The notes beneath the pieces were generated by a model. The model saw only the letters and a list, made by a program, of their open reading frames with translations. It did no database searches and had not been told where the DNA came from. This document shows, piece after piece, positions 5,999-62,800 of a stretch of DNA of 64,000 nucleotides. The translations under genes were made by a program, and so were the position numbers. The stretch is taken from positions 73,532,001 to 73,596,000 of the forward strand of contig NC_083230.1 in the NCBI RefSeq assembly GCF_032191835.1, given 5' to 3'. Position 1 is the first letter of the stretch, and each line of letters opens with the position of its first letter. This stretch comes from Heteronotia binoei. Its lineage: Eukaryota.

Positions 5999-8113
5999 TA
6001 CTCTGATGTGTTCTTAAGGGAAGTAATTCTTTAGATAGCATTAGTGACCTGCTATTCTAGTTGCTTCCAAGGATGTATGAGAAAGAAATGCCCTCAGAAT
6101 AGGGTTGCCAAGTCCAATTCAAGAAATATCTGGGGACTTTGAGGGTAGAGCCAGGAGATTTTGGGGGTGGAGCCAGAAGACATTGGGGGCAGAGCCAGGA
6201 GCAAGGGTGTGACAAGCATAATTGAACTCCAAGGGAGTTCTGGCCATCACATTTAATGGTACAGCACACCTTTTAAAATGCCTTTCTTCCATAGGAAATA
6301 ATGAAGGATAAGGGCACCTTCTTTTGGGGCTCATAGAATTGGACCCCCTGGTCCAATCGATTTGAAATTTGGGGGGTATTTTGGGAAAAGGCATTAGATG
6401 CTATACTGAAAATTTGGCGCCTCTACCTCAAAAAACAGGCCCCCCCAGAGCCCCTGATACCCACGGATTAATTCTCCATTATTCCCTATGGAAATCATTC
6501 TCCATAGACAATCAAGATGGCAGTGCGCAAGGAGCTCCGGTGCTAGACGGACGTGGCAGAGAGGTCTGCAGAGAGCGGTCTGCAGCTTTGTTCTGGCTTT
6601 GGCCTCATCACCGGAATACATTGGTGTCCATGCCTCTGTGGGCCTTGGCAGAGAAACCGGGGGAGCGCCAAGGGAGCCTCTGCTCCCCCGGAACACCCTG
6701 TGGTGCCGGCTTGATTTCAAGGTGCTGAAGGGCTGGTGGTCGGCCAGGGTGGGAGTGGGAGCAAGGGTGGGAGTGGAGCAAGGGCCTTGTGCTCCATCTG
6801 GTGAGAAGCTGGGAGGGGAACTTCCTTTTCCACCCTTTGCTCTGGCAGACTGAGAGTGTGCCTTCGGCGCCTGGGGATACTTTGGCACTCGAACTGCACC
6901 GGATCGCACTTTACACTTGCTGCACTTTATTCCATCCAGAACTCAGAGATCTTCAACTCATTTCATCAAGAAAGGACCGATAGAGAGCTTGCTTTGCTTT
7001 CAACCTATGCATTTAGCACATTATTTACACTTTGGTGGAGCCCATTGTCTTACTCAGCTCATTTGTTACTACTGAGCCATATTGTTCATTGCTGGTTAAA
7101 TTCAATTTACTTAGTTAATTGGTTTGTTAGGCTGGGCTAATCCAATTGGTAAAGTTGTCTGTATTTGTATTAGTATTTAAGAGATTGAGGAGGGTCTTAA
7201 TTAATTGGTTAGTTTGAGGAGAGATTTGATTAATGTAATTATCAATTGGATTGAGTAATCTCATAGATTAGAAGGAAGGGTTTAATTAATTAACTAGTGG
7301 AAATTAAATTGATTATTAAATTGATGCCTTTTAATTGTAATTTAAAGATTGGTTTTAGTTAGTGGATTGAGTCAATTGGGTTAAATTTAAGTGCGGAGGG
7401 TGTCCTATATTAATTAGCTAATAAAGGTTTAAATTAGTAGTAGGGGTCAATTTATCTGAAAAATTTAGATTCTGTGATTAATGGGCCTGAAGTGTAATAG
7501 ATTAAGGAACACAAGCTAGGTGAACCAACTCGGCTCGATAGCACTGTTCAGGGGAGGCCATGACTGGGTCAGGAATTTCGGTCATTTTGGGGCAGGGGAG
7601 ATATGACAGTGGGACTAGGTTTCAGAGATCAGGAACAGTCTAGAGATATGGGAAAGCTCGGACCTCTTCCCTCCTACGTCCCATCCCAAGGTATGCAGGT
7701 TGTGAGGCTAGAAAGATTTATTCGGCTCTGACATTGGTGTTGATTAATGCCAGGCCTATCAATAATAAGACCTACACCCTACATGATTATTTTATGGAAC
7801 AACAGATAGACCTGAATCAGCTTACCCCACTCGGGTTCTCAGTCCTCCACCAATCGTGGACTACTGGCCGGGGGGGGGGGGTTGTGGGGCTCATTCGTGA
7901 GTCTTTCTCTTTCAGGACACTTCCTGACCCAAACATCATGGGCATTGAATGTGTTGGTATGATATGGGAAGCCGAGGAGAGTTTGGCTATCTGGGTTGTG
8001 TACTGGGCACCCAACACACCCCCAGAGAGCCTGCCTGCTCTGCTAGAGGCGGTATCAACTTGGGCATTGGCATTCCCCAGATTATTAGTCCTGGGGGATT
8101 TCAATGTTCATGT

Positions 8114-39359: not shown

Positions 39360-39539
39360 GGTTCGGCCCTTCCCCAGCCAAGCCGGCTCGCCGGCGCTCA
39401 GGCTGGGGGCCGTCTTTGCCCCCTCGGAAGGAGGGAGGAGCAACGTCACCCGACATACGGGTCTTTGCTTGGGCGCGGAGTTGGGGCTATATAAGCCCTG
39501 GCTCCCGCCCTTCACCACGCAGTTTGTTTTGGCTCTCTG
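39360..39539 (+). repeat. Ngaro repeat A1 (180 bp, contains TATA box)
   Basis: 174/180 identical to A2 (45444-45623). Confidence 0.93.
39488..39494 (+). promoter_or_regulatory. TATA box of the Ngaro A repeat (second copy at 45572-45578)
   Basis: GGGCTATATAAGCC in GC-rich context near the 3' end of repeat A, upstream of the ORFs. Confidence 0.7.
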
Positions 39540-40364
39540 AACGAGAGCCACGTGCGGGTCGCGGTGCGGACGAGGCCTGATCGCGGCGAGGGACTGCGTT
39601 GAGCGCGTGCGGCGGCTCCTTTGCGCTCAGCGAGGACGCGTGCGGCGGCTATTCGGCGCTGGTGAGGCTGAGCATCCTTTTGTCTTTCAACTGTGTTGCC
39701 TGGGGTGGTTAGCGGCCGGGAGGCCGGAGCAGGCAAAGCGAGCGCGGCGGCCACCAGCATACCCCTGGCCCCTGGGCTCTTAGGGGCCGGTTTTAGGGTG
39801 GCAATTTCAGGGGGCAGTGAGCTGCTGCCACTCTCTCTTTCCCCTTGGAGCCGAGGGAAGCGCGCAGCGGCCCCTTTCAGCGGGCGGTTCGCAAGTGGGG
39901 GGCCAGTTTAAAGCATTTGCCTTTTCATTGAGGGCATAGGGCGTCGTTAGAGTGGGCTGCAGCCATTTTGGGCCCATTGGAAGCTGAGCTGCTCCCTTGG
40001 TGTGGGTCTGGCTTGGAGGGAACCTGGTGGGGGCAGATAATTACCTAACCCCCCCCCCCCTCAGGCTGGGCAGCCTGAGCCTACCTTCCCTGGTTGCTGG
40101 AGGCAACGTTGTGCTGGGGCTCGTTTTTCCAGTCACCCCCCTCCCTTCCCCTTTGGGTGCAGGGTGCCTGTGGTCCCTAGGGCAGCTGCTTTGGGGCCGG
40201 GCTGGGCCTTTGGCCTTCGGATTGGGTGTCTGGGGGACACTCCTTTACTGTAACCTTCCTACCACCACACCATCTGGTGGTGGGGGAGCGCAGAGGGAAT
40301 CTTTGAGTGACTGGGGGCAGCAGACACTGCTATTTTGCAGCCTGTGCTTATAGAAGCATATAAG

Positions 40365-41896
40365 ATGGCGCCTAAAAAGGGGCAGGGCAAGTCCAAGGGC
40401 AAGCAGCCCGCCCACCCACCGTGCGGGCGGGGTCAGCAGGGGACTCCCGCTGAGGAACCTGGGCAAGGGGAGCGGGTAAGGCTTGCCATTATGAGTCAGC
40501 TGGATGCCTTGGAACAGGACAGAGTAGCCAGGGGCGCCCCCATTTGGGAAGGGCGTCGCCGTGCCTCCGGCCGGTCAGCACGGCTGACTTTTGAGTCAGA
40601 AGTGCTCGCACGTCTATCTGCATTGCAGGGTGGGCCATCTGAGCCTGAATCACTGCTGGAACTGGACCAGGAGGAGGATCCGGAGGAAGGCCCATCGGGT
40701 GCGGCAATGGGCAGCGGTGCATCTGGTAGCGGTGTGCAGCAGACCCCTGGAGGCGCGGGTGTCTTCCCGGGTGACGGTGGTAAGCCCCCTCTTCCGCCAC
40801 TTCAAGGGTGGCCGTGGGGTCCCATTCAACTTCCTCCCCCCCCGCCGGTGGCGGGAGGGGTGGCATGGGGTGCTGGGCAGGTGGGAGTTGTGGAGCAGTC
40901 GGGTCCTGTCCAGCCGTGGGCTTGGGGTTTTCATGGAGCAAGCCCGCTTGCCAGTTCAGTCTTTTCCCCAGTGGGCCAGCAGGCGTGCGCTGTGGCGCCG
41001 CCTGCTGCCCCTGCCTCTCCGTCCACCCCTGGCATTTTGCCTTGGGGCGGTCAGCAGTTTGCCCAATTTCAGGGGGCATGGCCAGTGGCCCAGGGTAGTG
41101 GGTGGTTCTACCCCCCCCCAATCCTTATGCTAGCATTCCTTTCCACATCCTCCCTTATGGCGATACCTCTTTGCCTTTGGGGGATCATTTGACAGCTGCT
41201 ACACGTGAGAAAATTCTCCGCGAGGAGTATGTGGACGTTTTCAGCCTCCTTTTCAGAGAGCTCGAAAAGAAAAGTAAAGACGAGCTTGATGACAAGGAGA
41301 AGGAGAAATTGAAGCGCAGGAAGGTCGATAGGTCCTGGGCAAATTCGTTGCCCGGATTTTTGATCTACGCTGGGGTCATTGCTAGAGCGCAGCCGGCTCG
41401 GGCGGCAGCCCTTTTCCAGTATATAGACATTGTCTATCGGGCGTATACGGACTTCGTCGGTGCAGCATGGCTGCAATACGACGAGGCCTTCCGTATGAGG
41501 GCCGCCGTCAACCCGGGGATGCCCTGGGACCAAATAAACCAGCAGCTGTGGCTGCAGTTGATGTCCCCGGCAAAACCAAACGCCGGAGACAGGTCCGACA
41601 GTGGCCATTTAGTGCAGAAGTTGCAACAACAACAGTCTTCTACAGGGGCTCGCGTTACCGCGGGCCAGCCGGTTCAAACCCGGCTGTTATGTTGGGAGTT
41701 CGCATCTAAGGGTGTGTGCCCCAGGAAACCCTGTAAGTTTCGACACGAGTGTCCACTCTGCAGCGGGGCTCACGCACTCTCTGCCTGTAGCAGATCTAAG
41801 CCCAGAGCGGGCAGTAAGCGCCCCGGTGGCAGTGGCGGCGGTCAGCAGCCCCCTGGAAAAGGGGCCCAGCCCCATCTGCCTGACGGCACTCAATAG
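40365..41896 (+). pseudogene. Ngaro ORF1, Gag-like with C-terminal Cys/His zinc finger; frameshift in the C9 run 41111-41119
   Basis: ATG in strong context (aagATGG). ORF pieces 40335-41192 and 41102-41896 would join if the run were C10. Motifs W..YDEAFR and CWEFASKGVCPRKPCKFRHECPLCSGAHALSAC. Confidence 0.85.
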
Positions 41897-43479
41897 GTTG
41901 TTGAGTACATACCCGTGTGAGGCGGACGGCCGATACCTACGGGACGGTTTTACCTCGGGGTTCCGAATTCCATATCAGGGGACTAGGGCCCCCTTCTTAG
42001 CTCCTAATCTACGTTCGGTTGTTGGGCTCGAGCACGTGGTCTGGGCAAAAATAGCTAAAGAATGTCAGGAAGGTAGGGTCCTTGTACCTTTCGATGCACC
42101 GCCGGTCCCCACGCTGAGGGTATCCCCTTTGGGGGTGGTACCCAAGAAGGCAGCCGGTGAATATCGTATTATCCACCACCTGTCTTACCCCAAGGGGGCA
42201 TCGGTGAATGACGCCATCCCCAAGGAGCTATGCTCTGTGCGCTATACTTCTTTTGACCAGGCGGTCAAAGTAGTACGGGGTTGCGGGGTGGGGGCCGAGA
42301 TGGCGAAATGTGACATCAAGTCAGCATTTCGCCTCTTGCCTGTCCACCCCGAGAATTTTGAATTATTGGGTTTTTCCTTTGAAGGGAAATTCTATATGGA
42401 TCGGGCGTTGCCGATGGGTTGTTCGATATCCTGTGCTGCGTTCGAGCGCTTCAGTTCCTTCTTGGAATGGGCGCTCAGGGACTGGACTGGGATTAGTGAT
42501 ACGGCGCATTACCTGGACGACTATCTTTTCGTCGGCCCAGCGGGGTCAGAACAATGCGCCAGGTTGTTGACCTCCTTTCAGGAGTTAGCCCTCGAACTCG
42601 GGGTGCCGTTGGCACATGAAAAGACCGAGGGACCCAGCACGGTGCTCACCTTTTTGGGCATCGAGCTGGACACTCTGCAGCAGACCTCACATTTGATGGA
42701 GAACAAGGTCGCCGACCTTAAGGTCCGGTTGGCCACCTTGAGGGGACAGCGGAAGGTTTCGCTGTTGGAATTGCAGGAGGTTGTGGGCCACCTTAACTTT
42801 GCTTGCAAAGTGGTGGCCCCGGGCAGGGCATTTTTGAGGCGCCTGTGTGACGCTATGGGCCGGTTGCGCCCCCCCGATCACCGGGCCCGCGTTACCGCGG
42901 GAATGCGAGCGGACTTGGAGGTCTGGGAGGAGTTTTTGGGAGTTTTTCAATGGTGTTTCTTTCTGGAGGGAGGACCTGAAGATTGAAGCTGAGCTTCAGA
43001 TCTCTTCAGATGCGTCCGGAGCCAGCGGGTTCGGTGTATATTTTAGGGGACATTGGTGCGTAGAGCAATGGCCCGCGGAATGGTTGGACAGCGGGCTCTG
43101 TAGAGACCTGACATTCTTGGAATTTTTCCCCATTTTGGTGGCTGTTTGGCTTTGGGGGGAGCAGCTTGCCAACCATTCGGTCCTTTTCTGGTGCGATAAC
43201 ATGGCGGTAGTACATGTTATCAATTCTCTGACCTCTAAGTCAGTGTTGGTGATGAATTTGGTTAGGTCTTTTACCCTGCGCTGCCTCCGGTTGAATATTT
43301 TATTCCTGGCAAGGCACGTACCGGGTGTATGCAATGGGGTGGTGGATGCTCTATCTCGCCAACAGATGGTGCGTTTTCGGCAACTGGCCCCAGAAGCAGA
43401 TCCATGGCCGGCGAAAATGCCCGCGGACCTCTGGCATCTTGGGAAAAGGAAGCCGGTAGGGCCATTCAGCTGGCGCTAG
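41712..43479 (+). pseudogene. Ngaro ORF2, reverse transcriptase plus RNase H; +1 frameshift near 42940-42947
   Basis: RT motifs SPLGVVPKK, YRIIHHLS, KCDIKSAFR, LPMG and YLDD. RNase H motifs SDASG, LEFFPI, CDN and DALSR. Overlaps ORF1 and ORF3 in different frames, as is typical for DIRS-order elements. Confidence 0.92.
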
Positions 43480-44345
43480 CCCCTAGTACGAGGAGGGCAT
43501 ACGTTAGAGCGTCCACCCAATTTCGGGATTTCAGGAGTGCCGCTGCACTGCCGGATTGTTGGCCGATTCCAGCGGCGCACATCATGCAGTTCTGCGTGCA
43601 CCAGAAGGAGAGAGGCTTGGGGCTGAAAACTATTAGGGGCCAACTTGCGGCATTGGCTTTTGTTAGCAAAGCCCACGGTTTTCCTGAGTTCACGGGTGAT
43701 TTTAGGGTGAGGAAGATGCTAGAGGGCTGGGCCCGGGAGCGGGTCCAGCGAGTGGACGACAGGCAACCCATATCCCCGTCAGTCCTTAAGGGGTTGTTTG
43801 GGGGTTGGCCCAGCGTTTGTTCTTCCCCTTTTGAGGCTGCGTTGTTTCACGCTGCCTCGCTGTTGGCCTTTTTGGGGGCCTTGCGGGTAAGCGAGCTGGT
43901 AGTACAGTCTAAGGCTGATACTTCTGGGAGGGCGCTGCAGTCCGGGGATGTTAAAATTACTCATAGTCAGCTTGTTCTGACAATTCGGCGGTCCAAGACT
44001 GATCAGAGGCAGAGGAGATCCGTCATCACGATTGGCATGTGTTCTTTGCAGGAATTATGTCCGGTCAGGGCTGTTCGCCACTACGTCCAGCTTCGGGGTG
44101 ACGTTGGGGGTCCTTTTCTTCGGCATGATGATGGCTCCCCTCTCACCAAATATCAGTTCTGGACGGTGACAAGCAGGGTCCTAGCTAGGCTGGGTTTAAA
44201 GGGCGTCAAATTTGGGACGCATTCCTTCTGGATTGGGGCAGCCTCCACAGCTGCTTCAATGGGTTACATGCCCTCTGCCATCCGGCACATTGGCCGTTGG
44301 CGGTCTGCAGCCTACAAAACTTATGTGCGTCCACTGGTCACCTAA
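43329..44345 (+). CDS. Ngaro ORF3, tyrosine recombinase (open frame, but a catalytic Arg is replaced by Trp)
   Basis: LAPSTRRAY N-terminal domain; GALRVSEL (R), RSKTDQ (K), HSFWIG (normally HSFRIG), GRW and YKTYVR (Y). Confidence 0.92.
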   Translation: MQWGGGCSISPTDGAFSATGPRSRSMAGENARGPLASWEKEAGRAIQLALAPSTRRAYVRASTQFRDFRSAAALPDCWPIPAAHIMQFCVHQKERGLGLKTIRGQLAALAFVSKAHGFPEFTGDFRVRKMLEGWARERVQRVDDRQPISPSVLKGLFGGWPSVCSSPFEAALFHAASLLAFLGALRVSELVVQSKADTSGRALQSGDVKITHSQLVLTIRRSKTDQRQRRSVITIGMCSLQELCPVRAVRHYVQLRGDVGGPFLRHDDGSPLTKYQFWTVTSRVLARLGLKGVKFGTHSFWIGAASTAASMGYMPSAIRHIGRWRSAAYKTYVRPLVT

Positions 44346-44414
44346 GGGGCAGGTGGTGGGCGCTGTTGGGTTGCAATGTTGTTATCATCTGCTGACAGTT
44401 GTTTGTCTTTTCAG

Positions 44415-45010
44415 GTGCTGGGGCTCGTGGTGAGAGACGTCGTGTTCTCATCTGCAGGCACAGCATGGTTTTCTGGGCTGCCCATTTCGCCAGACGGTCT
44501 TCAGTGGGCACCCAGCTTGGCCTCAGTGCATGAGCGACTGTGGAGTGGCTGGGTCATCGGGGGCTGCGTTGGCCAGGGATTATGCCCCTGTTGTTCCGGG
44601 AGCAGAAGGCACCACCTCCACACATCCTAGTCGTCCATTTGGGAGGGAACGACTTGGGGCTGCTGTGTGGGAAGGCTCTCTCACAGCAGGCGTTGGCTGA
44701 CCTCCGCGAAATTCGGCGGAGGTGGCCTGGGGTTATTCTGGTATGGTCGGCAATTCTGCTGCATAGGGTGTGGAGGCATGCCATTTCGCCGGGTGGTGTT
44801 GAACGCGCTAGGTGCAAGGCCAATAGGGCCATTCAGAAAGCTATGGAAGGGGGATTGGGTATTTTTCTCCCGCATCCGGCCATACGGGTAGAGCAGGCTG
44901 ACCTGTATCGGCCGGATGGTGTTCATCTTTCTGAGTTGGGTAACCGGGCCTTTTTAGATGAGATACGGCAGGGTTTGCGGTTGGCTCTGGGCCATCCGTT
45001 GGGGCGCTAA
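44415..45010 (+). pseudogene. Ngaro ORF4, SGNH/GDSL-type hydrolase; in-frame TGA at 44531-44533
   Basis: Block I ICRHSMVFW (G-H-S equivalent), block III HLGGND, block V DGVHL. No in-frame ATG lies upstream of the Ser. Preceded by a branch point/pyrimidine tract/AG at 44392-44414. Confidence 0.85.
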
Positions 45011-45039
45011 TGCCTAAGCAGAGGCTTGGCATTGGCGGT

Positions 45040-45443
45040 GGCTGGAGGAGGTTTGGCCATAGGGTTTTCCAGGGGAGCACCTATGGCCTAGCACCGTTGG
45101 TGCGGTGGTCTGTATGAACCGTAGATGGGCTACACGGCTCAGTGCGGGGAATGCAGATCACAGGGAGCCTCACCTGGGCGGATCTTTCCATGGGGATCGA
45201 TGCTAGCCCAGGTGGTGAATGGCTGGAGGCCTGGCTGCTCAGCTACAACCCGAATACGGCGGGCTTGTGCTGGGGGCAGGGTGGCTCGCCCTTTGGACAA
45301 GGCGGGGTCCGGGGTTGACCCCAGGGCTTGCCTGGTTCAGGTTTTTACCCCTGCAGTTACAGTTAATTAATTGTTTAATAAAGCGGCCCGGTTTTAAAAC
45401 CCAACACTTGTGTCTGCCTCTTCATTCCGACTGGGGGGGGCAA
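45040..45443 (+). repeat. Ngaro repeat B1 (404 bp; AATAAA at 45377-45382)
   Basis: About 97% identical to B2, with a 6-bp indel and two 1-bp indels. Confidence 0.93.
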
Positions 45444-45623
45444 GGTTCGGCCCCTCCCCAGCCAAGCCGGCTCGCCGGCGCTCAGGCTGGGGGCTGTCTT
45501 TGCCCCCTCAGAAGGAGGGAGGAGCAACATCACCCGACATACGGGTCTTTGCTTGGGCGCGGAGTTGGGGCTATATAAGCCCCGGCTCCCGCCCTTCGCC
45601 ACGCAGTTTGTTTTGGCTCTCTG
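45444..45623 (+). repeat. Ngaro repeat A2
   Basis: Directly abuts B1, reproducing the predicted circle junction caa|ggttcgg. Confidence 0.93.
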
Positions 45624-45790
45624 CCCGCCCACCCTCCCTCTGGCAGTACAGGCGTATGCTGGTCGCCTTATTAGGGGCCAGGTAGGAATTTTTTCACTTC
45701 CACATAATTGGCTCACGTGGGGGTGTTTTTCGCCTACCTTGTACTGCCTAGTAGTGTTAGGATTTGTTATTGGTATTTGTTATGGTCGCA

Positions 45791-46188
45791 GGCTGGAGGA
45801 GGTTTGGCCACAGGGTTTTCCAGGGGAGCACCTATGGCCTAGCACCATTGGTGCGGTGGTCTGTATGAACCGCAGATGGGCTACACGGCTCAGTGCGGGG
45901 AATGCAGATCACAGGGAGCATCACCTGGGCGGATCTTTCCATGGGGATCGATGCTAGCCCAGGTGGTGAATGGCTGGAGGCCTGGCTGCTCAGCTACAAT
46001 ACGGCGGGCTTGTGCTGGGGGCAGGGTGGCTCGCCCTTTGGACAAGGCGGGGTCCGGGGTTGACCCCAGGGCTTGTCTGGTTCAGGTTTTCACCCCTGCC
46101 AGTTACAGTTAATTAATTGTTTAATAAAGCAGCCCAGTTTTAAAACCCATCACTTGTGTCTGCCTCTTCATTCTGACTGGGGGGTCAA
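45791..46188 (+). repeat. Ngaro repeat B2 (398 bp; AATAAA at 46123-46128)
   Basis: Copy of B1 that terminates the element. Confidence 0.93.
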
Positions 46189-46450
46189 ATTCCACCCTCC
46201 CCACAAGCGGGCTCAGTGCAGATAACAAGACAGGGTCAACGACATATTGCACTATGCAATTAATATAAATAAAAATCATTAAAACCTCTTTGGGCCACGT
46301 AGATGGAATCAGGTAGATGCCCCAACACATTGGGGACTACAGCAGGGAGGCCAACTAAGGTAGACACCCGTTGCTTCAACCAAAGGCGTGGCAGAACAGC
46401 TCTGTGTTACAGGCCATGCAGAATGGCAAAAGGTCCTACAGTGCCCTGTG

Positions 46451-55482: not shown

Positions 55483-58400
55483 GAATGGAAATTTATTATG
55501 ACATGAAGTTTGTAAATTTTAAAATGTTGAGCATTAAAATATATGAAAGTTTTTTAATGGTTACTATATTCCTTGTTTACCATCATAGTAGTTGTTTAAC
55601 TTCTCTCACCTGGACATTGGCAACAATGGTTCCACAGGAGGAAATGGCTGGTTTGGAGAGTGGAGTCTATGGCTTTGTACATATCTGAGGTCCCACCCCT
55701 CCTCAAACCCACTCTCCAGGCTCCACTCCTCAAATCTCCAGCAATTTGCCAACCTGGAATTGGCGACTGCTAAGTCACATTGGCTATCATAGTGGGACTG
55801 ATGCTGAACAGAAGCAAGCATGCTGGCCTAAAGTCATGCCAGTCAGGGAGCATCAGATCACCCAGATGGTGCGCTACCAGGCCTAGGGTAGCCAACCTCC
55901 AGTGGAGCCAAAAGATCTCCTGGGATCACAACTGAACTCCAGACAACAGATCTTTCTTCCCCTGGGGAAAATAACTGCTTTGGAGGGTGGACTGTATGAC
56001 ATTCTATTCAGCTGAGGGCTCTCCCTTTACTGCCTAGCAACAGCATCTGGCTAGCAGCTTCCCCCAGTGGCTCAATCCTCATCTGTCCTGGGTTGAGGCT
56101 GAGGGGAGGACGAAGGGAGTGACAGGAAAGAGTAGGCTGCCATGGCCTCTGAGGAAATGCTTTGGGAGGCCAAAAAGGACCCTTTCTGAGGCCAGTTGAT
56201 GGAGAGTGCACAGGGAAGCATTGGAGATGTGTCTGTCTCTGAGGTAAGACTGTTTTGGCAGTTTATTCAGTATTCCCTGGTCTGCAGTAGGTGGGGGACA
56301 GGGAAGTCAGACAACGGGAACCCAGAGTGGAGACTGATGCATGATGAGCCAATGGTTTGTTGGGCACACCAGTCAGCCAATGGGAGTGCTCCATTTGGCC
56401 ACTACCATTAGGGAATTATTATCTACAATGCTGGAACAAAATTAGGAAAGCATACACACAACATTACTTTTGTAGATAGCAAGGACTGTTTAGAAAAAGA
56501 TGGGGTTTCATTAACTTCTTACACACAAAATGAAGCCTACTGCTGGTTACAGCACTTATTTCAAAGAAACGAACATAAGATACAAAGTAGGTGAATAATA
56601 TCACCTTTAGTTATTGCAAAGAAAGTCAACAGAGACAAAACTGATATTAGTGGAATTAAGGCAGTGGTAGAGTCAAAAATGATAACAAAGAGGCATGTAA
56701 AAGAATATTTATACTATCCAAATACAGCACAGCTGAGCATAATGACATTAACACAATAATTTCAAAGGAACTCACTGTGCAAATCTCCAAACCCAGTTGC
56801 TTTATCTGAGAATCTATAGCAATCCAATACAATTCCAGAACACATTACAAACAAGGAAGAAGAACTGAAGGAAGCCTAATTGAATCCCTTAGAAGATATT
56901 AATCATAAAATAATTATGCTGTAATACACAACTGATAAAATATCTAGTTACTAAGGTCTAATATACAATAATTAATAACAAAATATGCTAACCCAATTTC
57001 CTTCTTTGTTAGGTAGCAGAAATGATAGATGCTACTGACAGTGTGCTACTGTCACACTTTCATTTCTTATAGAAGAAAAAAAAATAAGAAATGTGTTCCC
57101 TCACACACCAGCCCAATACAAAAGTGTTATCTATACCTTTTGAACATCTGACCAATAATGATTGGGCAGGTTAAACTAAGCTATGAAAAATTTGTATCAA
57201 TTTGATTGATATCTTTAGTCAACAAATATTTTATTTTATTTATTTACTTTCCATTTATATCCTGCCCATTCCAAACAGACTCAGACAATCAAAATAAAAC
57301 CAGCATCTCAGTTTCCGATATAAAATGATAAGACATAATAATTTACAATTTAAAACAAAATACTGGTGCTTTACAACATATTAAAAGTTTAGGCGGCTCA
57401 GATCATACTAGGCTTTCCATTTATCTGTTGGTGGTCCTTCTGGTGGAGTTGCCCAGCAGTGTATTTGAATATTTGAATATTTGAATATTTAAATCTGGTG
57501 ACTGGAACTGTGAATAGGTAAGACAGATCTTTCTACAAACCTGAAAAGTCCCCCAGGTTTGGAGAAAAATGTGAAATCTAAAACTAAAAAAAAATGCATT
57601 GGGAAGTTTTTAAAAATTCAAACATCGAAGAAACACCTGTAGCTTAAAAAAACAAAACCCTGATTCACACAGTGGCTGTTGTTAGGCAACCACAGTATTT
57701 TTGGATTTTTGTGATTAAAAAGGCAGGGGGGAGGACAAGACTTCTTCCAGGCCTATTTTGGCCTTTGAGGGAGGATTCATTGAGGCCAGACCTGACTTAA
57801 ATTGCCAACTCCAAGTTGGGAAGTTCCTGGAGATTTTGTAGTGACGCCTGAGAAGTGCAGTGTTTGGAGAGGGGAGAGGCCTCATCATGATATAATGTCA
57901 CAGAGTCCACCCTCTAAAGCAGTTATTTTCTCTAGAGAGATAGATCTCTGTCATCTGGAGTTCAGCTGTAATTCTGGGGGATCTCCAAGTCCCAGCTGGA
58001 GACTTGCAACCCAAGGCCTGACAGCAGCCTCTGAATGATTTGATACCACCTGACATGCATGATTCAACTAGGCCTGTTTACTTGTTACTATTCAACACCA
58101 GCCACCCTATGAAAGCCAGTGTGGTTGAGTTATTTGAGTCTCACAATAGGCTCTGCAAGACTCAGGTTTAGATCCCCATTCTGTTGTAGAAGCTCACTGA
58201 GTGATTTTGGACCAGTCACATAGTTTCAGCTTAACGTACCTCACATGGTTGTGAGGATAAAAAGGCTTTGGTCCCCACTATGGAGAAAGACTATAGTTTT
58301 CATAAGTAGTTTTCCTAAGCTGCAGAGAGGAGGAGATGGAAAACATAAGACTGCAGATTTATACCCCACCCTTCTCTCTGAATCAGAGACTCAGAGCAGC

Positions 58401-58574
58401 TTACAATCTTCTATATCTTCTCCCCCCACAACAGATACCCTGTGGGGTGGGTGGGGCTGAGAGGACTCTCACAGCAGCTGCCCTTTCAAGGACAACTCCT
58501 GCAGGGGCGTAGCTAGGGCTTTGGGGGCCCGGGGCCCAAGATTTATGTGGGCCCCCCTACGTGTGTGCACGCCA

Positions 58575-58710
58575 CCGGAAACAGGAAGTGACGTCACTTC
58601 CAGCGATGTCACTTCCGGTGACATCATGCCACCGCCGGAAACAGGAAGTGACATCACTTCCTGTGACATCATTTCCCCCGTGCCACCTGCCGGAAACGGG
58701 AAGTGATTCC
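58575..58710. repeat. Subterminal repeat array of the hAT element (three CCGGAAAC(A/G)GGAAGTGA units; 18-bp palindrome GGAAGTGACGTCACTTCC at 58584-58601)
   Basis: Units at about 58575, 58635 and 58690, read directly. Confidence 0.85.
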
Positions 58711-59000
58711 TGAAAACTTATACTCTGGAACTTTTGTTGATCTCTGAGGAGCCGGTGGACTTTGACCTAGGAGTAATCCAAGTAAAGTTAAGCCATTTTT
58801 CAAAAAAAACAGGGCCCAGAAGTATTTAACAGCACTGTGCCAACAGCAGCCATGCCAGCACATTACCTATCATTTCCCCAGGTGATCCAGGTTACTTTTT
58901 AAAATCTTCTTGGGGACTTCTCCGTGGCTGCAGAAGTTCTGTACCGATGTTACCTGGAACGCTTTGAAAGGAAGGCCAGGATCACGCACAATCGCTATTG

Positions 59001-59705
59001 CGGGGGTGGCCGAACTTGCTTAATGTAAGAGCCACACAGAATAAATGTCAGATGTTTGAAAGCCACAAGGAAGGAAGGAAGACAGACAGACAGATGATTT
59101 ATATTCTGCCCTCCACTCTGAGTCTCAGAATGGCTCACAATCTCCTTTATCTTCCTCCCCCACAACAAACACCCTGTGAGATAGGTGGCACTGAGAGAGC
59201 TCTCCCAGAAGCTGCCCTTTCAAGGACAATTGCTACGAGAGCTGTGGCTGACCCAAGGCCATTCCAGCAGATGCAAGTGGAGGCGTGAGGAATCAAACCT
59301 GGTTCTCCCAGATAAGAGTCTGCACACTTAACCACTACAATGGGAGGGAGGAAGGAAATGGATGGGGAGGGAGGGAGAAGTGGAAAGAAATATACTTTAA
59401 CTTTAAATGCACTCTCCAAGTCACCAGCTAGCTTGGCAAAGTGATTTAAAGAGACAAATGCCTTCTCCAAGCCAGCTACAGGGCAGTGGGGATTTCAAGA
59501 AACCTGGACTGGCCACAAAAACAAAAGCTCTGTGTTAGAAACTGCGTTCTCATGGGGAATTTGCAACCTCGAGTGACAGACATGTCCATTCACAACCAAT
59601 TTTAGATCCAAAACCTTCAGGAGTAACTCAAGAAAGTTTTGAGAGCCACACGATATGTGTGAAAGAGGCACATGTGGCTCCCGAGCAGCAGTTTGGCCAC
59701 CCCTG
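59001..59705. mobile_element. Nested hAT-Charlie-type MITE, itself interrupted by a Squam3-like SINE (about 59096-59338, minus)
   Basis: Termini cgggggtggccgaac / gtttggccacccctg and degenerate 8-bp TSD cgctattg/tgctactg. A second partial copy lies at about 59975-60356. Confidence 0.8.
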
Positions 59706-60066
59706 TGCTACTGGTAACCCCCAGGTCCTTGAACTCAAACTGCACTCCCCAACAGGCTGTGGCACAGTGGAGCAGTCCCCTCTACTCCAAAGCAATTTGG
59801 GGCCAGTCTCCATCAGCCTGACCTACCTCAAAGGGTTGCTGTGAGGACACAACACAGCTCCTTAGCTGAGATCAAAGTGCACTGGACAGAGGAGCAGATC
59901 AACACAGCAGGCAGGGGACCCCTCCACCCCCAGCCCCCGGGGCTGTGGCGGCACGGAGGCCATTGGGCGTGGGGAGAGCCAAACTCACTTAATGAAAGAG
60001 CCACATAAAGTAAACATCCGATGTTTGAGAGTTGCAAGACATGCGCATCAGGGGAAGGAAGGAAGG

Positions 60067-60247
60067 AATCACAGAATCCTAGAGTTGGAAGGGACCTCTA
60101 GGGTCATCTAGTCCAACCCCCTGCACAATGCAGGAAACTCACAAACACCTCCCCCTAAATTCACAGGATCTTCATTGCTGTCAGATGGCCATCTAGACTC
60201 TGTTTAAAAACCTCCAAGGAAGGAGAGCCCACCACCTCCCGAGGAAG
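60067..60247 (-). mobile_element. CR1-type 3' fragment inside the second Charlie-type MITE
   Basis: aatcacagaatcctagagttggaagggacctctagggtcatctagtccaaccc, as at 4518. Confidence 0.7.
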
Positions 60248-60675
60248 ATGGGGAAGGAGAGGTGGGAAGAAAGCAACTTTAACTTTAAATGCATTCTCCA
60301 ATCTGCCAGCTGACTTGGCTTGGAGAAGCGATTTAAAGAGAGAAATGCCTTCTCCACAGATCAATTTTCCATTGTACCCTATGAACTCAGCAAAGAGAAG
60401 CCGAGATAGGACAAGGGGGGGAAGTATTCTGCCATATATAGAAGGAAAAAGGCAACAGAGAGATGGTGCAGATGTACCTGTGGGATCAGGGAGTAGAAAA
60501 AGGGGGAGGGTTTTGAGAAGCACAGGAACAGAAACACCTGCATGGCTAGGAGGAGTATCTGTATTTCTCATTAGCTTTGTATTACCTTTCTGAGGCTTGT
60601 GACACTGGAGTACAACCTCTGAGTGGAGACAGGGTAAATGAAAGAAGCAAATTTATATACATAATTATGTTAGAA

Positions 60676-61436
60676 TTTTTGCGCCGAGCAAGGATACAGC
60701 GACTGGGCCAGACTTTTGATCTGAGCCATGAAACTGTCCATGTTGCCCTCAACGGCGGTAAAGTCCAGCGGGAAGCTCTCCACCGGCAGCCCTGCCGCCT
60801 CGCTCCGCTGGCGGGCCGCCGCCCGCCTGCTGCTGCCCCTGCCGCCTCCAGCTTTTCCTGCCCTCCCTGCCGCCGGGCCCCCAGTGCAGCAGCCCCAAGA
60901 GCAGCAGCAGCGACAGCCTCTGCACCGTCCCTCTGCCCATCGCGCTGCGGAGCCACCGGCCGGGAAGGAGGGGGAGAGGAAGGAGCTGCGGCGGCTCGAG
61001 GGCGCCTCGGGGACGCTGCGCTCTGCCCCTGGCGGCGAGCGGCGCTTCGCGGACTCTGCGTCGGGGGGGGCTCCCACCGGCAGCCTGCGCCCGCCCGCCC
61101 AGGGTCTAGCCGCGGGGAGGGAAGCGGGAGCCAGTGCCTGACGGTGCCCGAGCGGCCAGGGCTCAAGAGCAGCAGCAGCGGCAGCCTCTGCACCGCCACC
61201 GTCCCTCTGCCCATCGCGCCGCGGAGCCACTGGCCGGGAAGGAGGGAGAGGAAGGAGCTGCAGCGGCTCGAGGGCGCCTCGGGGACGCCGCGCTCTGCCC
61301 CTGGCGGCGAGCGGCGCTTCGCGGACTCTGCGTCGGGGGCTCCCACCGGCGGCCTGCGCCTGCCCGCCCGCCCAGGGTCTCGCCGCGGGGAGGGAAGCGG
61401 GAGCCAGTGCCTGACGGTGCCCGAGCGGCCGGGGCT
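60676..61436 (-). pseudogene. NOTUM: Captured 5' fragment of NOTUM (palmitoleoyl-protein carboxylesterase, Wnt deacylase): 5' UTR, signal peptide and about 85 codons; truncated and frameshifted
   Basis: From ATG 60940: MGRGTVQRLSLLLLLGLLHWGPGGREGRKSWRRQGQQQA, then an extra base at about 60822-60824, then AAARQRSEAAGLPVESFPLDFTAVEGNMDSFMAQIKSLAQSLYPCSAQK. This matches the recalled human NOTUM N-terminus (MGRGVRVLLLLSLLHCAGGSEGRKTWRRRGQQ...PVESFPLDFTAVEGNMDSFMAQVKSLAQSLYPCSAQQ). Similarity stops abruptly with no GT donor. Confidence 0.93.
60896..61436 (-). repeat. NOTUM: Tandem duplication of the NOTUM 5' UTR/start region (units 60896-61163 and 61164-61436)
   Basis: Two units of about 270 bp, each with its own ATG (60940, 61214). 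They differ by a 6-bp indel, short indels and several CpG transitions. Confidence 0.92.
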
Positions 61437-62800
61437 CTGCGAGGGGCCCCCCAGACCTGCAGGGGCCCCCGAGACCCGGGGCGGCCCGCCCTCCCCGCCC
61501 CCCCTCTTTACGCCACTGAACTCCTGCAATAGCTATGGCTAACCCAAGGCCACTCCAGCAGCTGTAAGTGAAGGAGTGGGGAATCAAACTCAGTTCTCCC
61601 AGATAAGTGTCCGCACACTTAACCACTACACCAAACTGGCTGAAGAAAGAGCAGCAGATAAAGGTAAATTGGCTGTTGGGTGGGAAGGAGATAGTATTGC
61701 CAACATCAGGTTTGGAAAGTCCTAAAGATTTGTAGGTATCTTGCTCGTTCACAGTTCCAGTTTTGGGCAAGATGGGGTTTGAGGAGGGGAGCTGCCTCGA
61801 ATGGGTAAAAAGCCATGGACTCCACCCTCCAAAGCAGTCACTTCCTCCATGAAATCTAGCACTGTCAATCTCTTGGTGATGGCTGGAGATCAGTCAGAAT
61901 TGCAACAGATGAAAGAGATCAGTTCCACTGGAGAAAAATGGCTGCTTTGGTGGGTGGACTCTATGGCATTATACCCTGCTGAGATTACTTCCTTCCCCAA
62001 ACCTCACCCTTCCAAGGCTGTCCCCAAATCTCCACAAATTTCCCAGTCTGGAGCTGGTAACCCTAAGGGGAAATGATCTCTGTAGGTAGAAGATCCATTG
62101 TGATTCCTGGAGAGCCCCACCACTGCTGTAGGGAAGGAGAGGAATCAGGTGGGTGACTGGGAGCACTACTGCCACTTTTGATGCTGTAGGTGAGAAGCAG
62201 GTAGGAGGCCAGGAGAGTGATGCTTGGGAGGAGAGAGGGTAGGGAGGCAGAAAGAGAGACAAAGTGGCAAGCATGAAGGAGAGAAAGAAGCATGGCAGGA
62301 GGGAGAAAGTGTGAGAAATTGAGAGAATTAGGGGAAGAACGTGGAAAGCAAAGAGGGGGAATGGAATAACTACTCCAGCAAGTTTCCTGTGGGTTGTATA
62401 TGTATTTTTTGTTTGGGTGTTGTAGAATTCATCATTAAAGGCAAAAAAATATTTACTTCAAAGCATAGATTAAGGGCTATACAAACTTCCAAGATCCATT
62501 TATTTTATCCATGACACAATGCAGAGAAACAAAACCATTTCAAACAATCAGTTCCCACTGTTCATTCCCTGCCAATGACTGAATCAGCTCTAACCTGGTT
62601 TTGAGAGTGGTAACTGCATTTCACCAAGCAGAATTAACACAGACATGGCTGAAAAGTACCTGGGTAAATGCAGTGGTCTTCACAATTTTAAATAGCACTA
62701 CAAGAAAAAGTTAGGTAGTTTCCAGATGGAAATATGCTATAGATATTTACCAAGATCTGAGGTTTTTCTCTTGAAACTTAGTGTCCAGGAGTGTCTAGAC

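What the first reader, a model, noticed from the sequence alone, without database searches (positions are those of the whole stretch)
58494..61526. A hAT-type DNA transposon carrying a piece of the Wnt regulator NOTUM (vertebrate Pack-TIR candidate)
Seen in sequence: CAGGGGCGTA...TACGCCACTG termini and an exact 8-bp TSD (AACTCCTG). The flanks rejoin into one intact Squam3-like SINE, so the 3,017 bp arrived as a single insertion. Inside is a NOTUM 5' fragment lying against the right end, and no transposase. Established: 8-bp TSDs typify hAT elements; gene capture by TIR transposons is common in plants (Pack-MULEs) but far less documented in vertebrates; NOTUM is a secreted Wnt deacylase. Inference: this is DNA-level gene capture, not retroposition, because the piece is the 5' end with UTR, breaks within coding sequence and has no poly(A). 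The element may be a multi-copy family dispersing a NOTUM CpG-island fragment.
Basis: partly seen in the sequence, partly recalled or inferred. Interest (0 to 1): 0.92.

Follow-up and report, generated by a model that had tools for sequence, protein, structure and literature searches.

The report
Multicopy hAT transposon carrying NOTUM fragment
A 3-kb cut-and-paste (hAT) transposon with no transposase of its own carries a dead copy of the promoter-side end of the Wnt-regulator gene NOTUM. It has recently spread to at least 27 places in this squamate genome, far more copies than the few multicopy gene-carrying DNA transposons described in vertebrates.

Summary
Window 58502-61518 is a 3,017-bp element with hAT-type ends (CAGGG.../...CACTG) and a perfect 8-bp duplication (AACTCCTG). 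It sits as one insertion inside a SINE.

It belongs to a family with about 1,000 left ends in the genome. At least 27 copies on 11 contigs carry the same NOTUM junction. Twenty-eight of 30 fetched copies have their own perfect 8-bp duplication, and copies differ by about 0.5%.

The cargo is a chimera:
- a 320-bp piece whose only other match is on contig C2 (98%);
- about 490 bp of NOTUM upstream/5'UTR plus the first 88 codons, copied from C13.

The NOTUM piece breaks inside exon 1, was then partly duplicated in tandem, and is frameshifted. There is no poly(A) and no transposase.

New here: a sibling subfamily (23 copies) has the same 1.86-kb backbone (0.28% different). At the same place and in the same orientation it carries a Rab-GTPase first exon with upstream and intron DNA.

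The cargo is older than the burst: 3-10% from its parent, with CpG content undecayed. No RNA contig covers it.

The kind is known (Pack-TIR, Tan et al. 2021), but the copy numbers are unusual for a vertebrate. This scan has noted other gene-carrying hAT elements elsewhere in this genome.

The parts
58347..58493 (.). Left half of the host SINE that was split by the insertion
   Evidence: Rejoined flanks align across the junction with four other SINE copies. The SINE boundary at about 58347 comes from loose ends of contigs.
58494..58501 (.). Left copy of the 8-bp target-site duplication AACTCCTG
58502..58518 (+). Left terminal inverted repeat CAGGGGCGTAGCTAGGG (YARNG-type end)
   Evidence: 13/17 match to the reverse complement of the right end; 1,021 genomic occurrences of the 25-mer.
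58519..58710 (.). Left subterminal region: GGGGCCC motifs, then three ~55-60-bp repeats holding palindromes of the type GGAAGTGACGTCACTTCC
   Evidence: Repeat families D11 and D13 and inverted repeats I1, I2, I5; GGGGCCC motifs cluster at both ends.
58711..60356 (.). Backbone shared with the Rab-carrying subfamily. It is a mosaic: two diverged units of a dispersed repeat (59002-59089 + 59341-59470; 59971-60066 + 60251-60356), each split by a SINE-type insert (59090-59340; 60067-60250).
   Evidence: Element positions 1-1855 are 99.8% identical to L026. Direct repeats D6, D8, D12, D1, D3. The 39-mer at 60318-60356 has 1,122 genomic hits. Very high contig depth on the SINE parts.
60357..60676 (.). 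320-bp filler: first captured piece, with a probable donor at G000:C2:95510121-95510440
   Evidence: All 28 genomic matches were scored: 27 element copies plus one extra locus at 98% identity that lacks the NOTUM junction.
60677..60940 (-). NOTUM exon-1 coding piece (start codon to ...PCSAQ). It is frameshifted, so the ATG frame stops after 63 codons.
   Evidence: E=3e-19 to human NOTUM. Aligned to the parental exon on C13, it breaks 66 nt before the splice donor. The frameshift is shared by nearly all copies.
60941..61441 (-). NOTUM 5'UTR/upstream CpG-island DNA. It contains a 272-bp tandem duplication (units about 60896-61168 and 61169-61441), and the second unit repeats the start codon.
   Evidence: Repeat families D2, D4, D5 with spacing 272-274. 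Homology to the parent ends near 61441. Units differ 3%. GC 0.75, CpG o/e 0.81. Copies L023 and L024 have a single unit.
61442..61518 (-). Right subterminal region with GGGGCCC motifs, and the right terminal inverted repeat (ends ...TACGCCACTG)
   Evidence: Only 79% identical to the right end of the Rab subfamily. 500 genomic hits for a degenerate right-end pattern.
61519..61526 (.). Right copy of the 8-bp target-site duplication AACTCCTG
61527..61641 (.). Right half of the host SINE
   Evidence: (D1).

Best explanation
This is one copy of a non-autonomous hAT DNA transposon of the Pack-TIR kind. The family has about 1,000 members in the genome.

Shown:
- In this lineage the right-hand third of the element consists of host DNA copied in as DNA. 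One piece is 320 bp from contig C2. The other is about 490 bp of the NOTUM CpG island (upstream/5'UTR plus the first 88 codons of exon 1) from contig C13, and part of it was later duplicated in tandem.
- The loaded element kept both ends and was moved to at least 27 sites, each with its own 8-bp duplication.
- The spread is recent: copies differ by about 0.5%.
- The NOTUM piece cannot make NOTUM. It is frameshifted, has no enzyme domain, and its frames drift between copies.

Inferred:
- A hAT transposase supplied by another element moved it.
[quoted passage not shown] 2021).
- The right-hand cargo module is older than its association with the present backbone, so it was probably joined to that backbone by recombination between elements.
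- A sister subfamily gained a Rab first exon in the same way.
For: Ends and TSD.
Family size: 1,021 left ends and 500 right ends, against 0 or 1 for the reversed controls.
NOTUM-type copies: 27 share the filler/NOTUM junction, on contigs C1, C2, C3, C4, C5, C6, C8, C9, C10, C13 and C21.
Independent insertions: 28/30 fetched copies have distinct perfect TSDs.
Age of the burst: mean pairwise divergence 0.47%.
NOTUM identity: E=3e-19.
Parent: NOTUM exon 1 at C13:~62371415-62371864, with sharp homology ends inside exon 1 and about 250 bp upstream of the ATG.
No transposase domain.
Filler donor: one extra genomic locus at 98%.
Sister subfamily: the backbone is 0.28% different, the cargo is a Ras-family exon 1 (PF00071, E=4.7e-9) plus about 65 bp past a GT donor and GC-rich upstream DNA, and 23 copies exist. 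The intron DNA shows capture from genomic DNA.
Cargo older than the burst: 3.2% (125 conserved nt) to 10% (436 nt) from the parent, and the tandem units differ 3%.
Frameshift shared by copies.
Literature: multicopy Pack-hAT with 5'UTR cargo and a GC bias is described in frog (PMC8277862). Lizard non-autonomous hAT families show frequent inter-element recombination and uptake of extraneous DNA (PMC3014272).
Against: - No autonomous partner with these ends was identified.
- The capture mechanism is inferred from breakpoints only. The donor sequence of the filler was not read, so microhomology at that junction is unknown.
- The NOTUM cargo is 3-10% from the resident NOTUM gene while copies differ by 0.5%, and the Rab cargo has no high-identity parent in this assembly. 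Capture in this very genome is therefore not proven.
- No read-level confirmation of the junctions and no test of insertion polymorphism was possible.
Confidence: 0.85

Rival explanations
1. Macrotransposon origin. Two separate hAT insertions, or one element plus a stray right end, flanked the NOTUM 5' region, and transposase cut the outer ends. The host DNA between them then became the interior of a new composite element, with no template switching needed.
For: The cargo lies directly against a short (77-bp) right end that is only 79% identical to the right end of the sister subfamily, while the left 1,855 bp are 99.7-99.8% identical. The two ends therefore have different histories. Both cargos sit at the same end.
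Against: The cargo is made of two unlinked donors (C2 and C13) joined at a sharp junction, which a single flanked segment does not explain. No family end was found within the 70 kb read around NOTUM. The 25-mer/19-mer end patterns show no pair flanking the C2 donor; the nearest right end is 48 kb away.
Confidence: 0.12
2. The element was loaded in another lineage and entered this genome later, by hybridisation or horizontal transfer of the hAT element. Its NOTUM and Rab pieces would then come from a foreign genome.
For: Cargo-parent divergence of 3-10% against 0.5% among copies. The Rab exon has no parent above 55% amino-acid identity in this assembly, and DNA matches are only 86-87% over about 75 bp. 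Runs labelled as two other organisms hold cargo-specific words. Four of five autonomous hAT families in the anole arrived by horizontal transfer (PMC3014272).
Against: The filler piece has a 98% donor in this genome. The conserved NOTUM block is 97% identical to the resident gene. GC-rich UTR DNA aligns poorly, which inflates divergence (ts:tv about 1). A missing Rab parent may be an assembly gap or a masked stretch. An old capture followed by a recent burst explains the same numbers.
Confidence: 0.1
3. The NOTUM piece is a retrocopy (reverse-transcribed mRNA 5' end) that landed inside a hAT element.
For: The piece contains only first-exon and upstream sequence, and no NOTUM intron DNA is present.
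Against: There is no poly(A) and no target duplication around the piece. It is the 5' end and breaks inside exon 1, 66 nt before the donor. It is fused to a non-genic filler from another contig. The sister cargo carries intron DNA past the splice donor.
Confidence: 0.02
4. Assembly artefact, or the real NOTUM first exon at this locus.
For: None beyond the lack of long-read confirmation.
Against: 27 copies share the same internal junction, and fetched copies have different flanks and perfect TSDs. The NOTUM gene with its PAE-domain exon and a complete exon 1 is on C13.
Confidence: 0.01

Closest known systems
Multicopy Pack-TIR / Pack-hAT elements of animals (Tan et al. 2021, Nat Commun 12:4280, PMC8277862), e.g. 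Pack-hAT-N8_XT of Xenopus tropicalis carrying 291 bp of the CAPSL 5'UTR
   Same: A non-autonomous hAT shell with both ends and 8-bp TSDs. It holds an internal piece copied from an identifiable host gene 5' region. Copies lie on different chromosomes with distinct TSDs. The cargo is GC-rich. The fragment is non-coding or dead.
   Different: Copy number is 27 (NOTUM type) and 23 (Rab type), against 3-5 copies in the frog example; only 4 multicopy cases were found in 100 animal genomes. The host is a squamate. The cargo is a two-donor chimera with a later tandem duplication. Two different gene 5' ends sit on one nearly identical backbone. The capture is clearly older than the burst.
Pack-MULEs of rice and other Pack-TYPE plant transposons (PMC5861414, PMC8903248)
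   Same: TIR elements that carry gene fragments, often from several loci in one element. They prefer GC-rich gene 5' ends, and some members are amplified.
   Different: The superfamily is hAT, not Mutator. The host is a vertebrate. The scale shown here is two cargo types in one family, not thousands. No expression or small-RNA evidence was found.
Non-autonomous hAT families of Anolis carolinensis, e.g. hobo-N families (Novick et al. 2010, PMC3014272)
   Same: 8-bp TSD and YARNG ends. Structures are very diverse because of inter-element recombination and uptake of extraneous DNA. The families are young, and non-autonomous copies far outnumber autonomous ones.
   Different: That paper does not report host exons or promoters as cargo: the words 'exon' and 'host gene' do not occur in it. 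Here the extraneous DNA is traced to two host loci, one of them a named gene.
Helitron gene capture in vespertilionid bats (PMC4224331, PMC4778049)
   Same: A vertebrate DNA transposon that amplifies promoter and first-exon fragments of host genes to many copies.
   Different: Helitrons use rolling-circle transposition with end-bypass transduction and have no TIRs or 8-bp TSD. Here the capture is internal to a cut-and-paste element.

Membership tests
hAT superfamily (non-autonomous member) | 8-bp target-site duplication | tested here: met
   28 of 30 fetched copies have perfect 8-bp TSDs, all different. One is ambiguous in a C-run and one lacks its right end in the locus.
hAT superfamily (non-autonomous member) | Terminal motif YARNG and short imperfect TIRs (criterion as used in PMC3014272) | tested here: met
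   CAGGG at the left end and CAGTG at the right end (reverse complement); 13/17 terminal bases match.
hAT superfamily (non-autonomous member) | Target preference nTnnnnAn (from my own knowledge of hAT elements) | tested here: inconclusive
   T at position 2 in 12/28 TSDs and A at position 7 in 9/28. This is a weak enrichment in a small sample.
hAT superfamily (non-autonomous member) | Mobilised by a hAT transposase that recognises these ends | not testable with these tools
   The genome holds many intact ~940-aa ORFs with a hAT dimerisation domain, but none of those on C1/C2 lies next to a listed family end. The one nearby hit (C2:79491100) could not be read.
Pack-TIR (TIR transposon carrying captured host sequence; Tan et al. 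2021) | Both TIR-element ends present around an internal segment whose parental non-transposon locus can be identified | tested here: met
   NOTUM piece: parent exon 1 and upstream at C13:62371415-62371864. Filler: a single extra locus on C2 at 98%, known by coordinates only.
Pack-TIR (TIR transposon carrying captured host sequence; Tan et al. 2021) | Multicopy status shown by copies with distinct TSDs | tested here: met
   27 copies share the junction; TSDs are distinct.
Processed retrocopy | Poly(A) tail, 3'-anchored fragment, own target duplication | tested here: not met
   It is a 5' fragment that breaks inside exon 1, with no A-tract or flanking duplication.
Functional NOTUM paralogue (carboxylesterase of the PAE family, PF03283) | PAE/esterase domain and an open reading frame | tested here: not met
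   Only the first 88 codons are present and the domain is absent. The ATG frame stops after 63 codons in nearly all copies. The PAE domain was found only at C13.

The most novel reading that the evidence does not exclude
The CpG-island cargo is not a passive passenger. In both amplified subfamilies a host promoter and first exon sit against the right end, pointing inward, and the NOTUM island has kept its full CpG content despite 3-10% divergence from its parent. The captured islands may stay unmethylated and give the element an open-chromatin or promoter module. That could help it escape silencing and be cut out, which would explain why the cargo-bearing lineages are the ones that burst. This genome would then host an active, large-scale Pack-hAT system that prefers gene 5' ends, a vertebrate counterpart of rice Pack-MULEs. 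It might also produce small RNAs against NOTUM and other donor genes.
Probability: 0.15. Interest if true: 0.85.

Novelty: new member of a known kind. Interest (0 to 1): 0.55.

Why it matters
Gene-fragment capture by cut-and-paste transposons is a major force in plant genomes. In animals it has looked rare and almost always single-copy: 4 multicopy cases among 370 in 100 genomes (PMC8277862).

This vertebrate family has moved one captured promoter-plus-first-exon module to at least 27 sites and another to 23, within about 0.5% divergence. The hAT machinery is therefore probably still active or was active very recently.

The family is a natural system for several questions:
- how TIR elements pick up host DNA;
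- whether CpG islands keep their unmethylated state when scattered around a genome;
- whether dozens of stray NOTUM or Rab promoters and first exons create new transcription starts, chimeric transcripts or small RNAs against the donor genes.

Together with other notes of this scan on the same genome (unchecked here), it suggests that capture of gene 5' ends may be systematic in this lizard.

Tried and rejected
I did not try to read those letters by another route. Only coordinates were used afterwards.
- Pairing left and right ends on C1 gave 35 elements of 1,577-4,470 bp. This shows very varied interiors, but I could not read them.
- Counting the 39-mer at the backbone/cargo boundary, to find other cargo types on this backbone, was uninformative. 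It belongs to a dispersed repeat with 1,122 hits.
- Naming the Rab failed. The PDB search gives only generic Rab/Ypt7 hits, and the atlas look-up gives only Ras/Roc clusters. My recollection that it resembles RAB20 is untested.
- Searching for the Rab parent found no high-identity exon. Absence may reflect a gap or a masked stretch.
- Autonomous partner: none of the listed hAT-domain hits on C1/C2 lies beside a listed family end, except C2:79491100, which is unresolved.
- Reads: the joined 'empty site' form (58493->61519) seen in RNA contigs has only 18-21 letters on one side and comes from other SINE copies, so it is no evidence of polymorphism. RNA contigs cover backbone and filler (58706-59024, 59638-60095, 60353-60596) at low depth, but none covers 60620-61466. 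Transcription of the cargo is therefore not supported, and DNA carry-over cannot be excluded for the rest.
- The left-end-like site at window 44174 is a chance near-match inside an unrelated repeat.
- Retrocopy, misassembly and 'true NOTUM exon' readings were rejected (see rivals).
Full report
**1. The observation**

Reading the window directly shows AACTCCTG at 58494-58501 and again at 61519-61526. These bracket a 3,017-bp stretch that starts CAGGGGCGTA and ends TACGCCACTG. The two ends are inverted repeats matching at 13 of the first 17 bases.

If the stretch and one TSD copy are removed, the flanks align without a break across the junction. They match the SINE copy nested inside the element (79% over 258 bp) and three further SINE copies elsewhere in the window (84-88.5%, 0-4 gaps). 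The 3 kb therefore arrived as one insertion in a SINE. I could not check the name 'Squam3'.

On the minus strand, 60679-60795 translates to AGLPVESFPLDFTAVEGNMDSFMAQIKSLAQSLYPCSAQ, which matches human NOTUM at 37 of 39 residues (E=3e-19). None of the element's ORFs hits a transposase or any other Pfam family above threshold.

**2. It is a real, multicopy, recently mobile element**

A search of the window's own genome (2.63 Gb, 661 contigs; the window is C8:73,532,001-73,596,000) found at least 22 full-length copies at 99-100% identity, plus shorter relatives.

| Count | Result |
|---|---|
| 25-nt left end, up to 2 mismatches | 1,021 (reversed control 0) |
| 25-nt left end, exact | 439 |
| Degenerate right-end pattern | 500 (reversed control 1) |
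| 29-nt filler/NOTUM junction | 27, on contigs C1, C2, C3, C4, C5, C6, C8, C9, C10, C13, C21 |

Of 30 fetched copies, 28 have a perfect 8-bp TSD and all the TSDs differ. Mean pairwise divergence among 23 NOTUM-type copies is 0.47%. These are independent, recent transpositions, not segmental duplications or an assembly artefact.

The 8-bp TSD and the CAGGG/CAGTG (YARNG) ends are the features used to assign lizard elements to hAT (PMC3014272). The nTnnnnAn target preference is only weakly visible.

**3. Anatomy of the element**

- **Left end:** the TIR and a subterminal region with GGGGCCC motifs, which also cluster at the right end.
- **58560-58710:** three ~55-60-bp repeats with palindromes of the type GGAAGTGACGTCACTTCC.
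- **58711-60356:** the backbone, itself a mosaic. It holds two diverged units of a dispersed repeat, each split by a SINE-type insert. The 39-mer at the end of the second unit has 1,122 genomic hits.
- **60357-60676:** a 320-bp AT-rich filler.
- **60677-60940:** NOTUM coding sequence on the minus strand.
- **60941-61441:** NOTUM 5'UTR/upstream DNA, including a 272-bp tandem duplication that repeats the start codon.
- **61442-61518:** the right subterminal region and TIR.

**4. Where the cargo came from**

The Pfam PAE domain, which NOTUM contains, hits the genome once, at C13:62,357,263-62,357,478 on the minus strand. Fourteen kb upstream in gene sense, at C13:62,371,415-62,371,864, lies the parental exon 1.

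The parent reads MGRGTGHRLL...PCSAQNLHQELRLHLLLNSSVACNDGSPAG, followed by GTGAGT. The element's homology stops sharply after ...PCSAQ, 66 nt before that splice donor. At the other end it stops about 250 bp upstream of the ATG. The captured piece was therefore about 490 bp of promoter/5'UTR plus 88 codons, taken as DNA. It has no poly(A), no 3' anchoring and no NOTUM intron sequence, and its break is inside the exon.

The 320-bp filler has 28 matches in the whole genome, and all were scored. Twenty-seven are the element copies. The remaining one is at C2:95,510,121-95,510,440 (98%), where the NOTUM junction is absent. That locus is the probable second donor. The cargo is thus a two-donor chimera, as is common in Pack-MULEs.

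**5. A sister subfamily with a different gene**

Copies L025-L030 (about 2.58-2.59 kb) share element positions 1-1855 at 99.8% and then diverge. At the same place and in the same orientation they carry three parts, in gene sense:

- GC-rich upstream DNA;
- an intact first exon reading MKPDGKVVLLGDMNVGKTSLLHRYMERRFQGTVSTVGGAFFLKQWGPHHISLWDTAG (Ras family PF00071, E=4.7e-9; generic Rab hits in the PDB);
- about 65 bp beyond a GT donor, which is intron DNA.

This again shows capture from genomic DNA. There are 23 copies at 98-100%.

No high-identity parental exon exists in this assembly. The best protein hit is 55% identical, and the DNA hits are 86-87% over about 75 bp. This remains unexplained. 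It could be a gap, a masked stretch, an old capture or a foreign origin.

The backbone differs by only 0.28% between the NOTUM and Rab types, the same as within each type. Their right-terminal ~75 bp, however, are only 79% identical.

**6. Order of events**

| Comparison | Divergence |
|---|---|
| NOTUM cargo vs parent, 125 best-conserved nt | 3.2% |
| NOTUM cargo vs parent, 436 alignable nt (ts:tv about 1, so GC-rich misalignment may inflate it) | 10% |
| The two 272-bp tandem units | 3% |
| Filler vs C2 locus | about 2% |
| Between element copies | about 0.5% |

The order was therefore capture, then tandem duplication, then a much later burst.

Because the backbone is shared almost identically with the Rab type while the right ends differ, the cargo module and the backbone were probably joined by recombination between elements. 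That process is documented as frequent in anole hAT families (PMC3014272). Copies L023 and L024, with a single 272-bp unit, may be deletion derivatives.

The ATG-frame stop after 63 codons is shared by nearly all copies. Frames otherwise drift by indels, so there is no coding constraint.

**7. CpG content and expression**

The cargo has GC 0.75 and CpG observed/expected 0.81, the same as the parental island (0.80). The backbone has 0.30. CpG sites have not decayed faster than other sites: 7 parent-to-element and 3 element-to-parent changes among roughly 50 CpGs. I infer, without having shown it, that the island stayed unmethylated in the germline while travelling.

In contigs of three RNA-seq runs, parts of the backbone and the filler are present at low depth with no mismatches, but nothing covers 60620-61466. 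A small DNA run labelled as another organism holds a 301-nt contig on the duplicated NOTUM UTR. Runs of two other organism labels hold about 20% of the cargo-specific words. There is therefore no evidence that the captured promoter fires. The apparent 'empty site' joint only reflects other SINE copies.

**8. Mechanism**

*Shown:* the element has hAT-type ends and TSDs and no transposase. The cargo is of genomic DNA origin, from one donor that was read and a second known by coordinates. Loaded copies transposed repeatedly.

*Inferred:* the element was mobilised in trans by a hAT transposase. The genome has many intact ~940-aa ORFs with a hAT dimerisation domain, but I could not link any of them to these ends. 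[quoted passage not shown] The sharp junctions, the two unlinked donors and the local duplication all fit this.

A macrotransposon origin (two ends flanking host DNA) and import of an already loaded element remain possible at roughly 10% each. Retroposition and misassembly are effectively excluded.

**9. Comparison with what is known**

Tan et al. 2021 (PMC8277862) catalogued 370 Pack-TIRs in 100 animal genomes (81 vertebrates), 208 of them hAT. Only four were multicopy: three in Xenopus tropicalis and one in alligator. Their worked example is 291 bp of the CAPSL 5'UTR in hAT-N8_XT, on three chromosomes, with five copies mentioned. They note that multicopy cases favour GC-rich DNA.

The present element is the same kind of thing, so the category is not new. 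It differs in four ways:

- copy number, 27 and 23;
- youth of the burst;
- two different gene 5' ends on one backbone;
- the chimeric, later-duplicated cargo.

'Pack-hAT' occurs in only three papers of the searchable library. The anole DNA-transposon survey reports extraneous DNA and recombination but never mentions exons or host genes.

**10. Earlier notes of this scan**

These are unchecked AI notes. They report on other windows of the same genome, which one note calls Bynoe's gecko; I could not verify the species. They describe hAT shells carrying 5' pieces of CCDC50, CHCHD3, TERT, LONRF1 and others. One note describes a non-coding hAT family of about a thousand copies with an ETS-like repeat array, which matches the family counted here. 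So the scan has found this kind of element before on other DNA of this genome. Neither NOTUM nor a RAB20-type cargo had been noted.

**11. Verdict**

This is a new member of a known kind, with unusually high copy number and a sibling cargo. Together these make the family a good candidate for an active vertebrate Pack-hAT system.

The main limit of this work is that the remaining ~950 family members could not be read. Element lengths of 1.6-4.5 kb on C1 show that their interiors vary widely, but not what they contain.

Noticed in passing
L025-L030 (e.g. L026:3358-4095); 23 genomic copies listed: A sister subfamily on the same backbone carries a Rab-type GTPase first exon with upstream GC-rich DNA and about 65 bp of intron, in the same position and orientation as the NOTUM piece. 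No high-identity parent exon was found in the assembly.
   Followed up: partly
G000:C2:118308841-118311901, C2:107639870-107643407, C5:94185808-94187434, C5:89434092-89435277 (coordinates only): A ~58-bp motif from the right subterminal region of the family forms long tandem arrays with a period of about 90 bp inside some long family members. This probably explains part of the 4-5-kb copies.
   Followed up: no
window 58572-58706: The left subterminal repeats contain palindromes combining GGAAGT (ETS-like) and TGACGTCA (CRE-like) motifs, three units about 55-60 bp apart. They could be transposase-binding sites or promoter-like sequence.
   Followed up: no
G000, many contigs, e.g. C1:35329283, C8:81710164, C10:49234880: Dozens of hAT dimerisation-domain hits lie in uninterrupted open frames of about 937-944 aa, so an autonomous hAT family appears intact and abundant in this genome. 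Its termini were not examined.
   Followed up: no
G000:C2:79491100-79491333 (+), 4.5 kb inside an element whose left end is at C2:79495804-79495828 (-): This is the only listed hAT-domain hit lying close to a listed end of this family (about 0.035 expected by chance). It may be an autonomous or nested copy.
   Followed up: no
window 59002-59470 and 59971-60356; C13 region (L033, about 7136-7461 of that locus, inside NOTUM intron 1): The backbone holds two diverged units of a separate dispersed repeat (the 39-mer has 1,122 genomic hits). A copy of that repeat also lies about 4 kb from the parental NOTUM exon 1.
   Followed up: partly
G000:C2:95558089-95558107 (+): A right end of the exact type otherwise seen only in the window's own subgroup (CCCCCTCTTTACGCCACTG) has no NOTUM junction nearby. 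It lies 48 kb from the probable donor of the 320-bp filler.
   Followed up: no
window 61064-61334, run X2: A 301-nt contig from a DNA run labelled as another organism lays on the duplicated NOTUM UTR as two overlapping pieces (61064-61221 and 61192-61334). This suggests a slightly different repeat arrangement in that sample.
   Followed up: no
window 44100-46200: An unrelated element shows long direct repeats (about 45040-45400 and 45790-46150) next to coding-looking sequence. Scan notes for this window call 39360-46188 a Ngaro retrotransposon.
   Followed up: no
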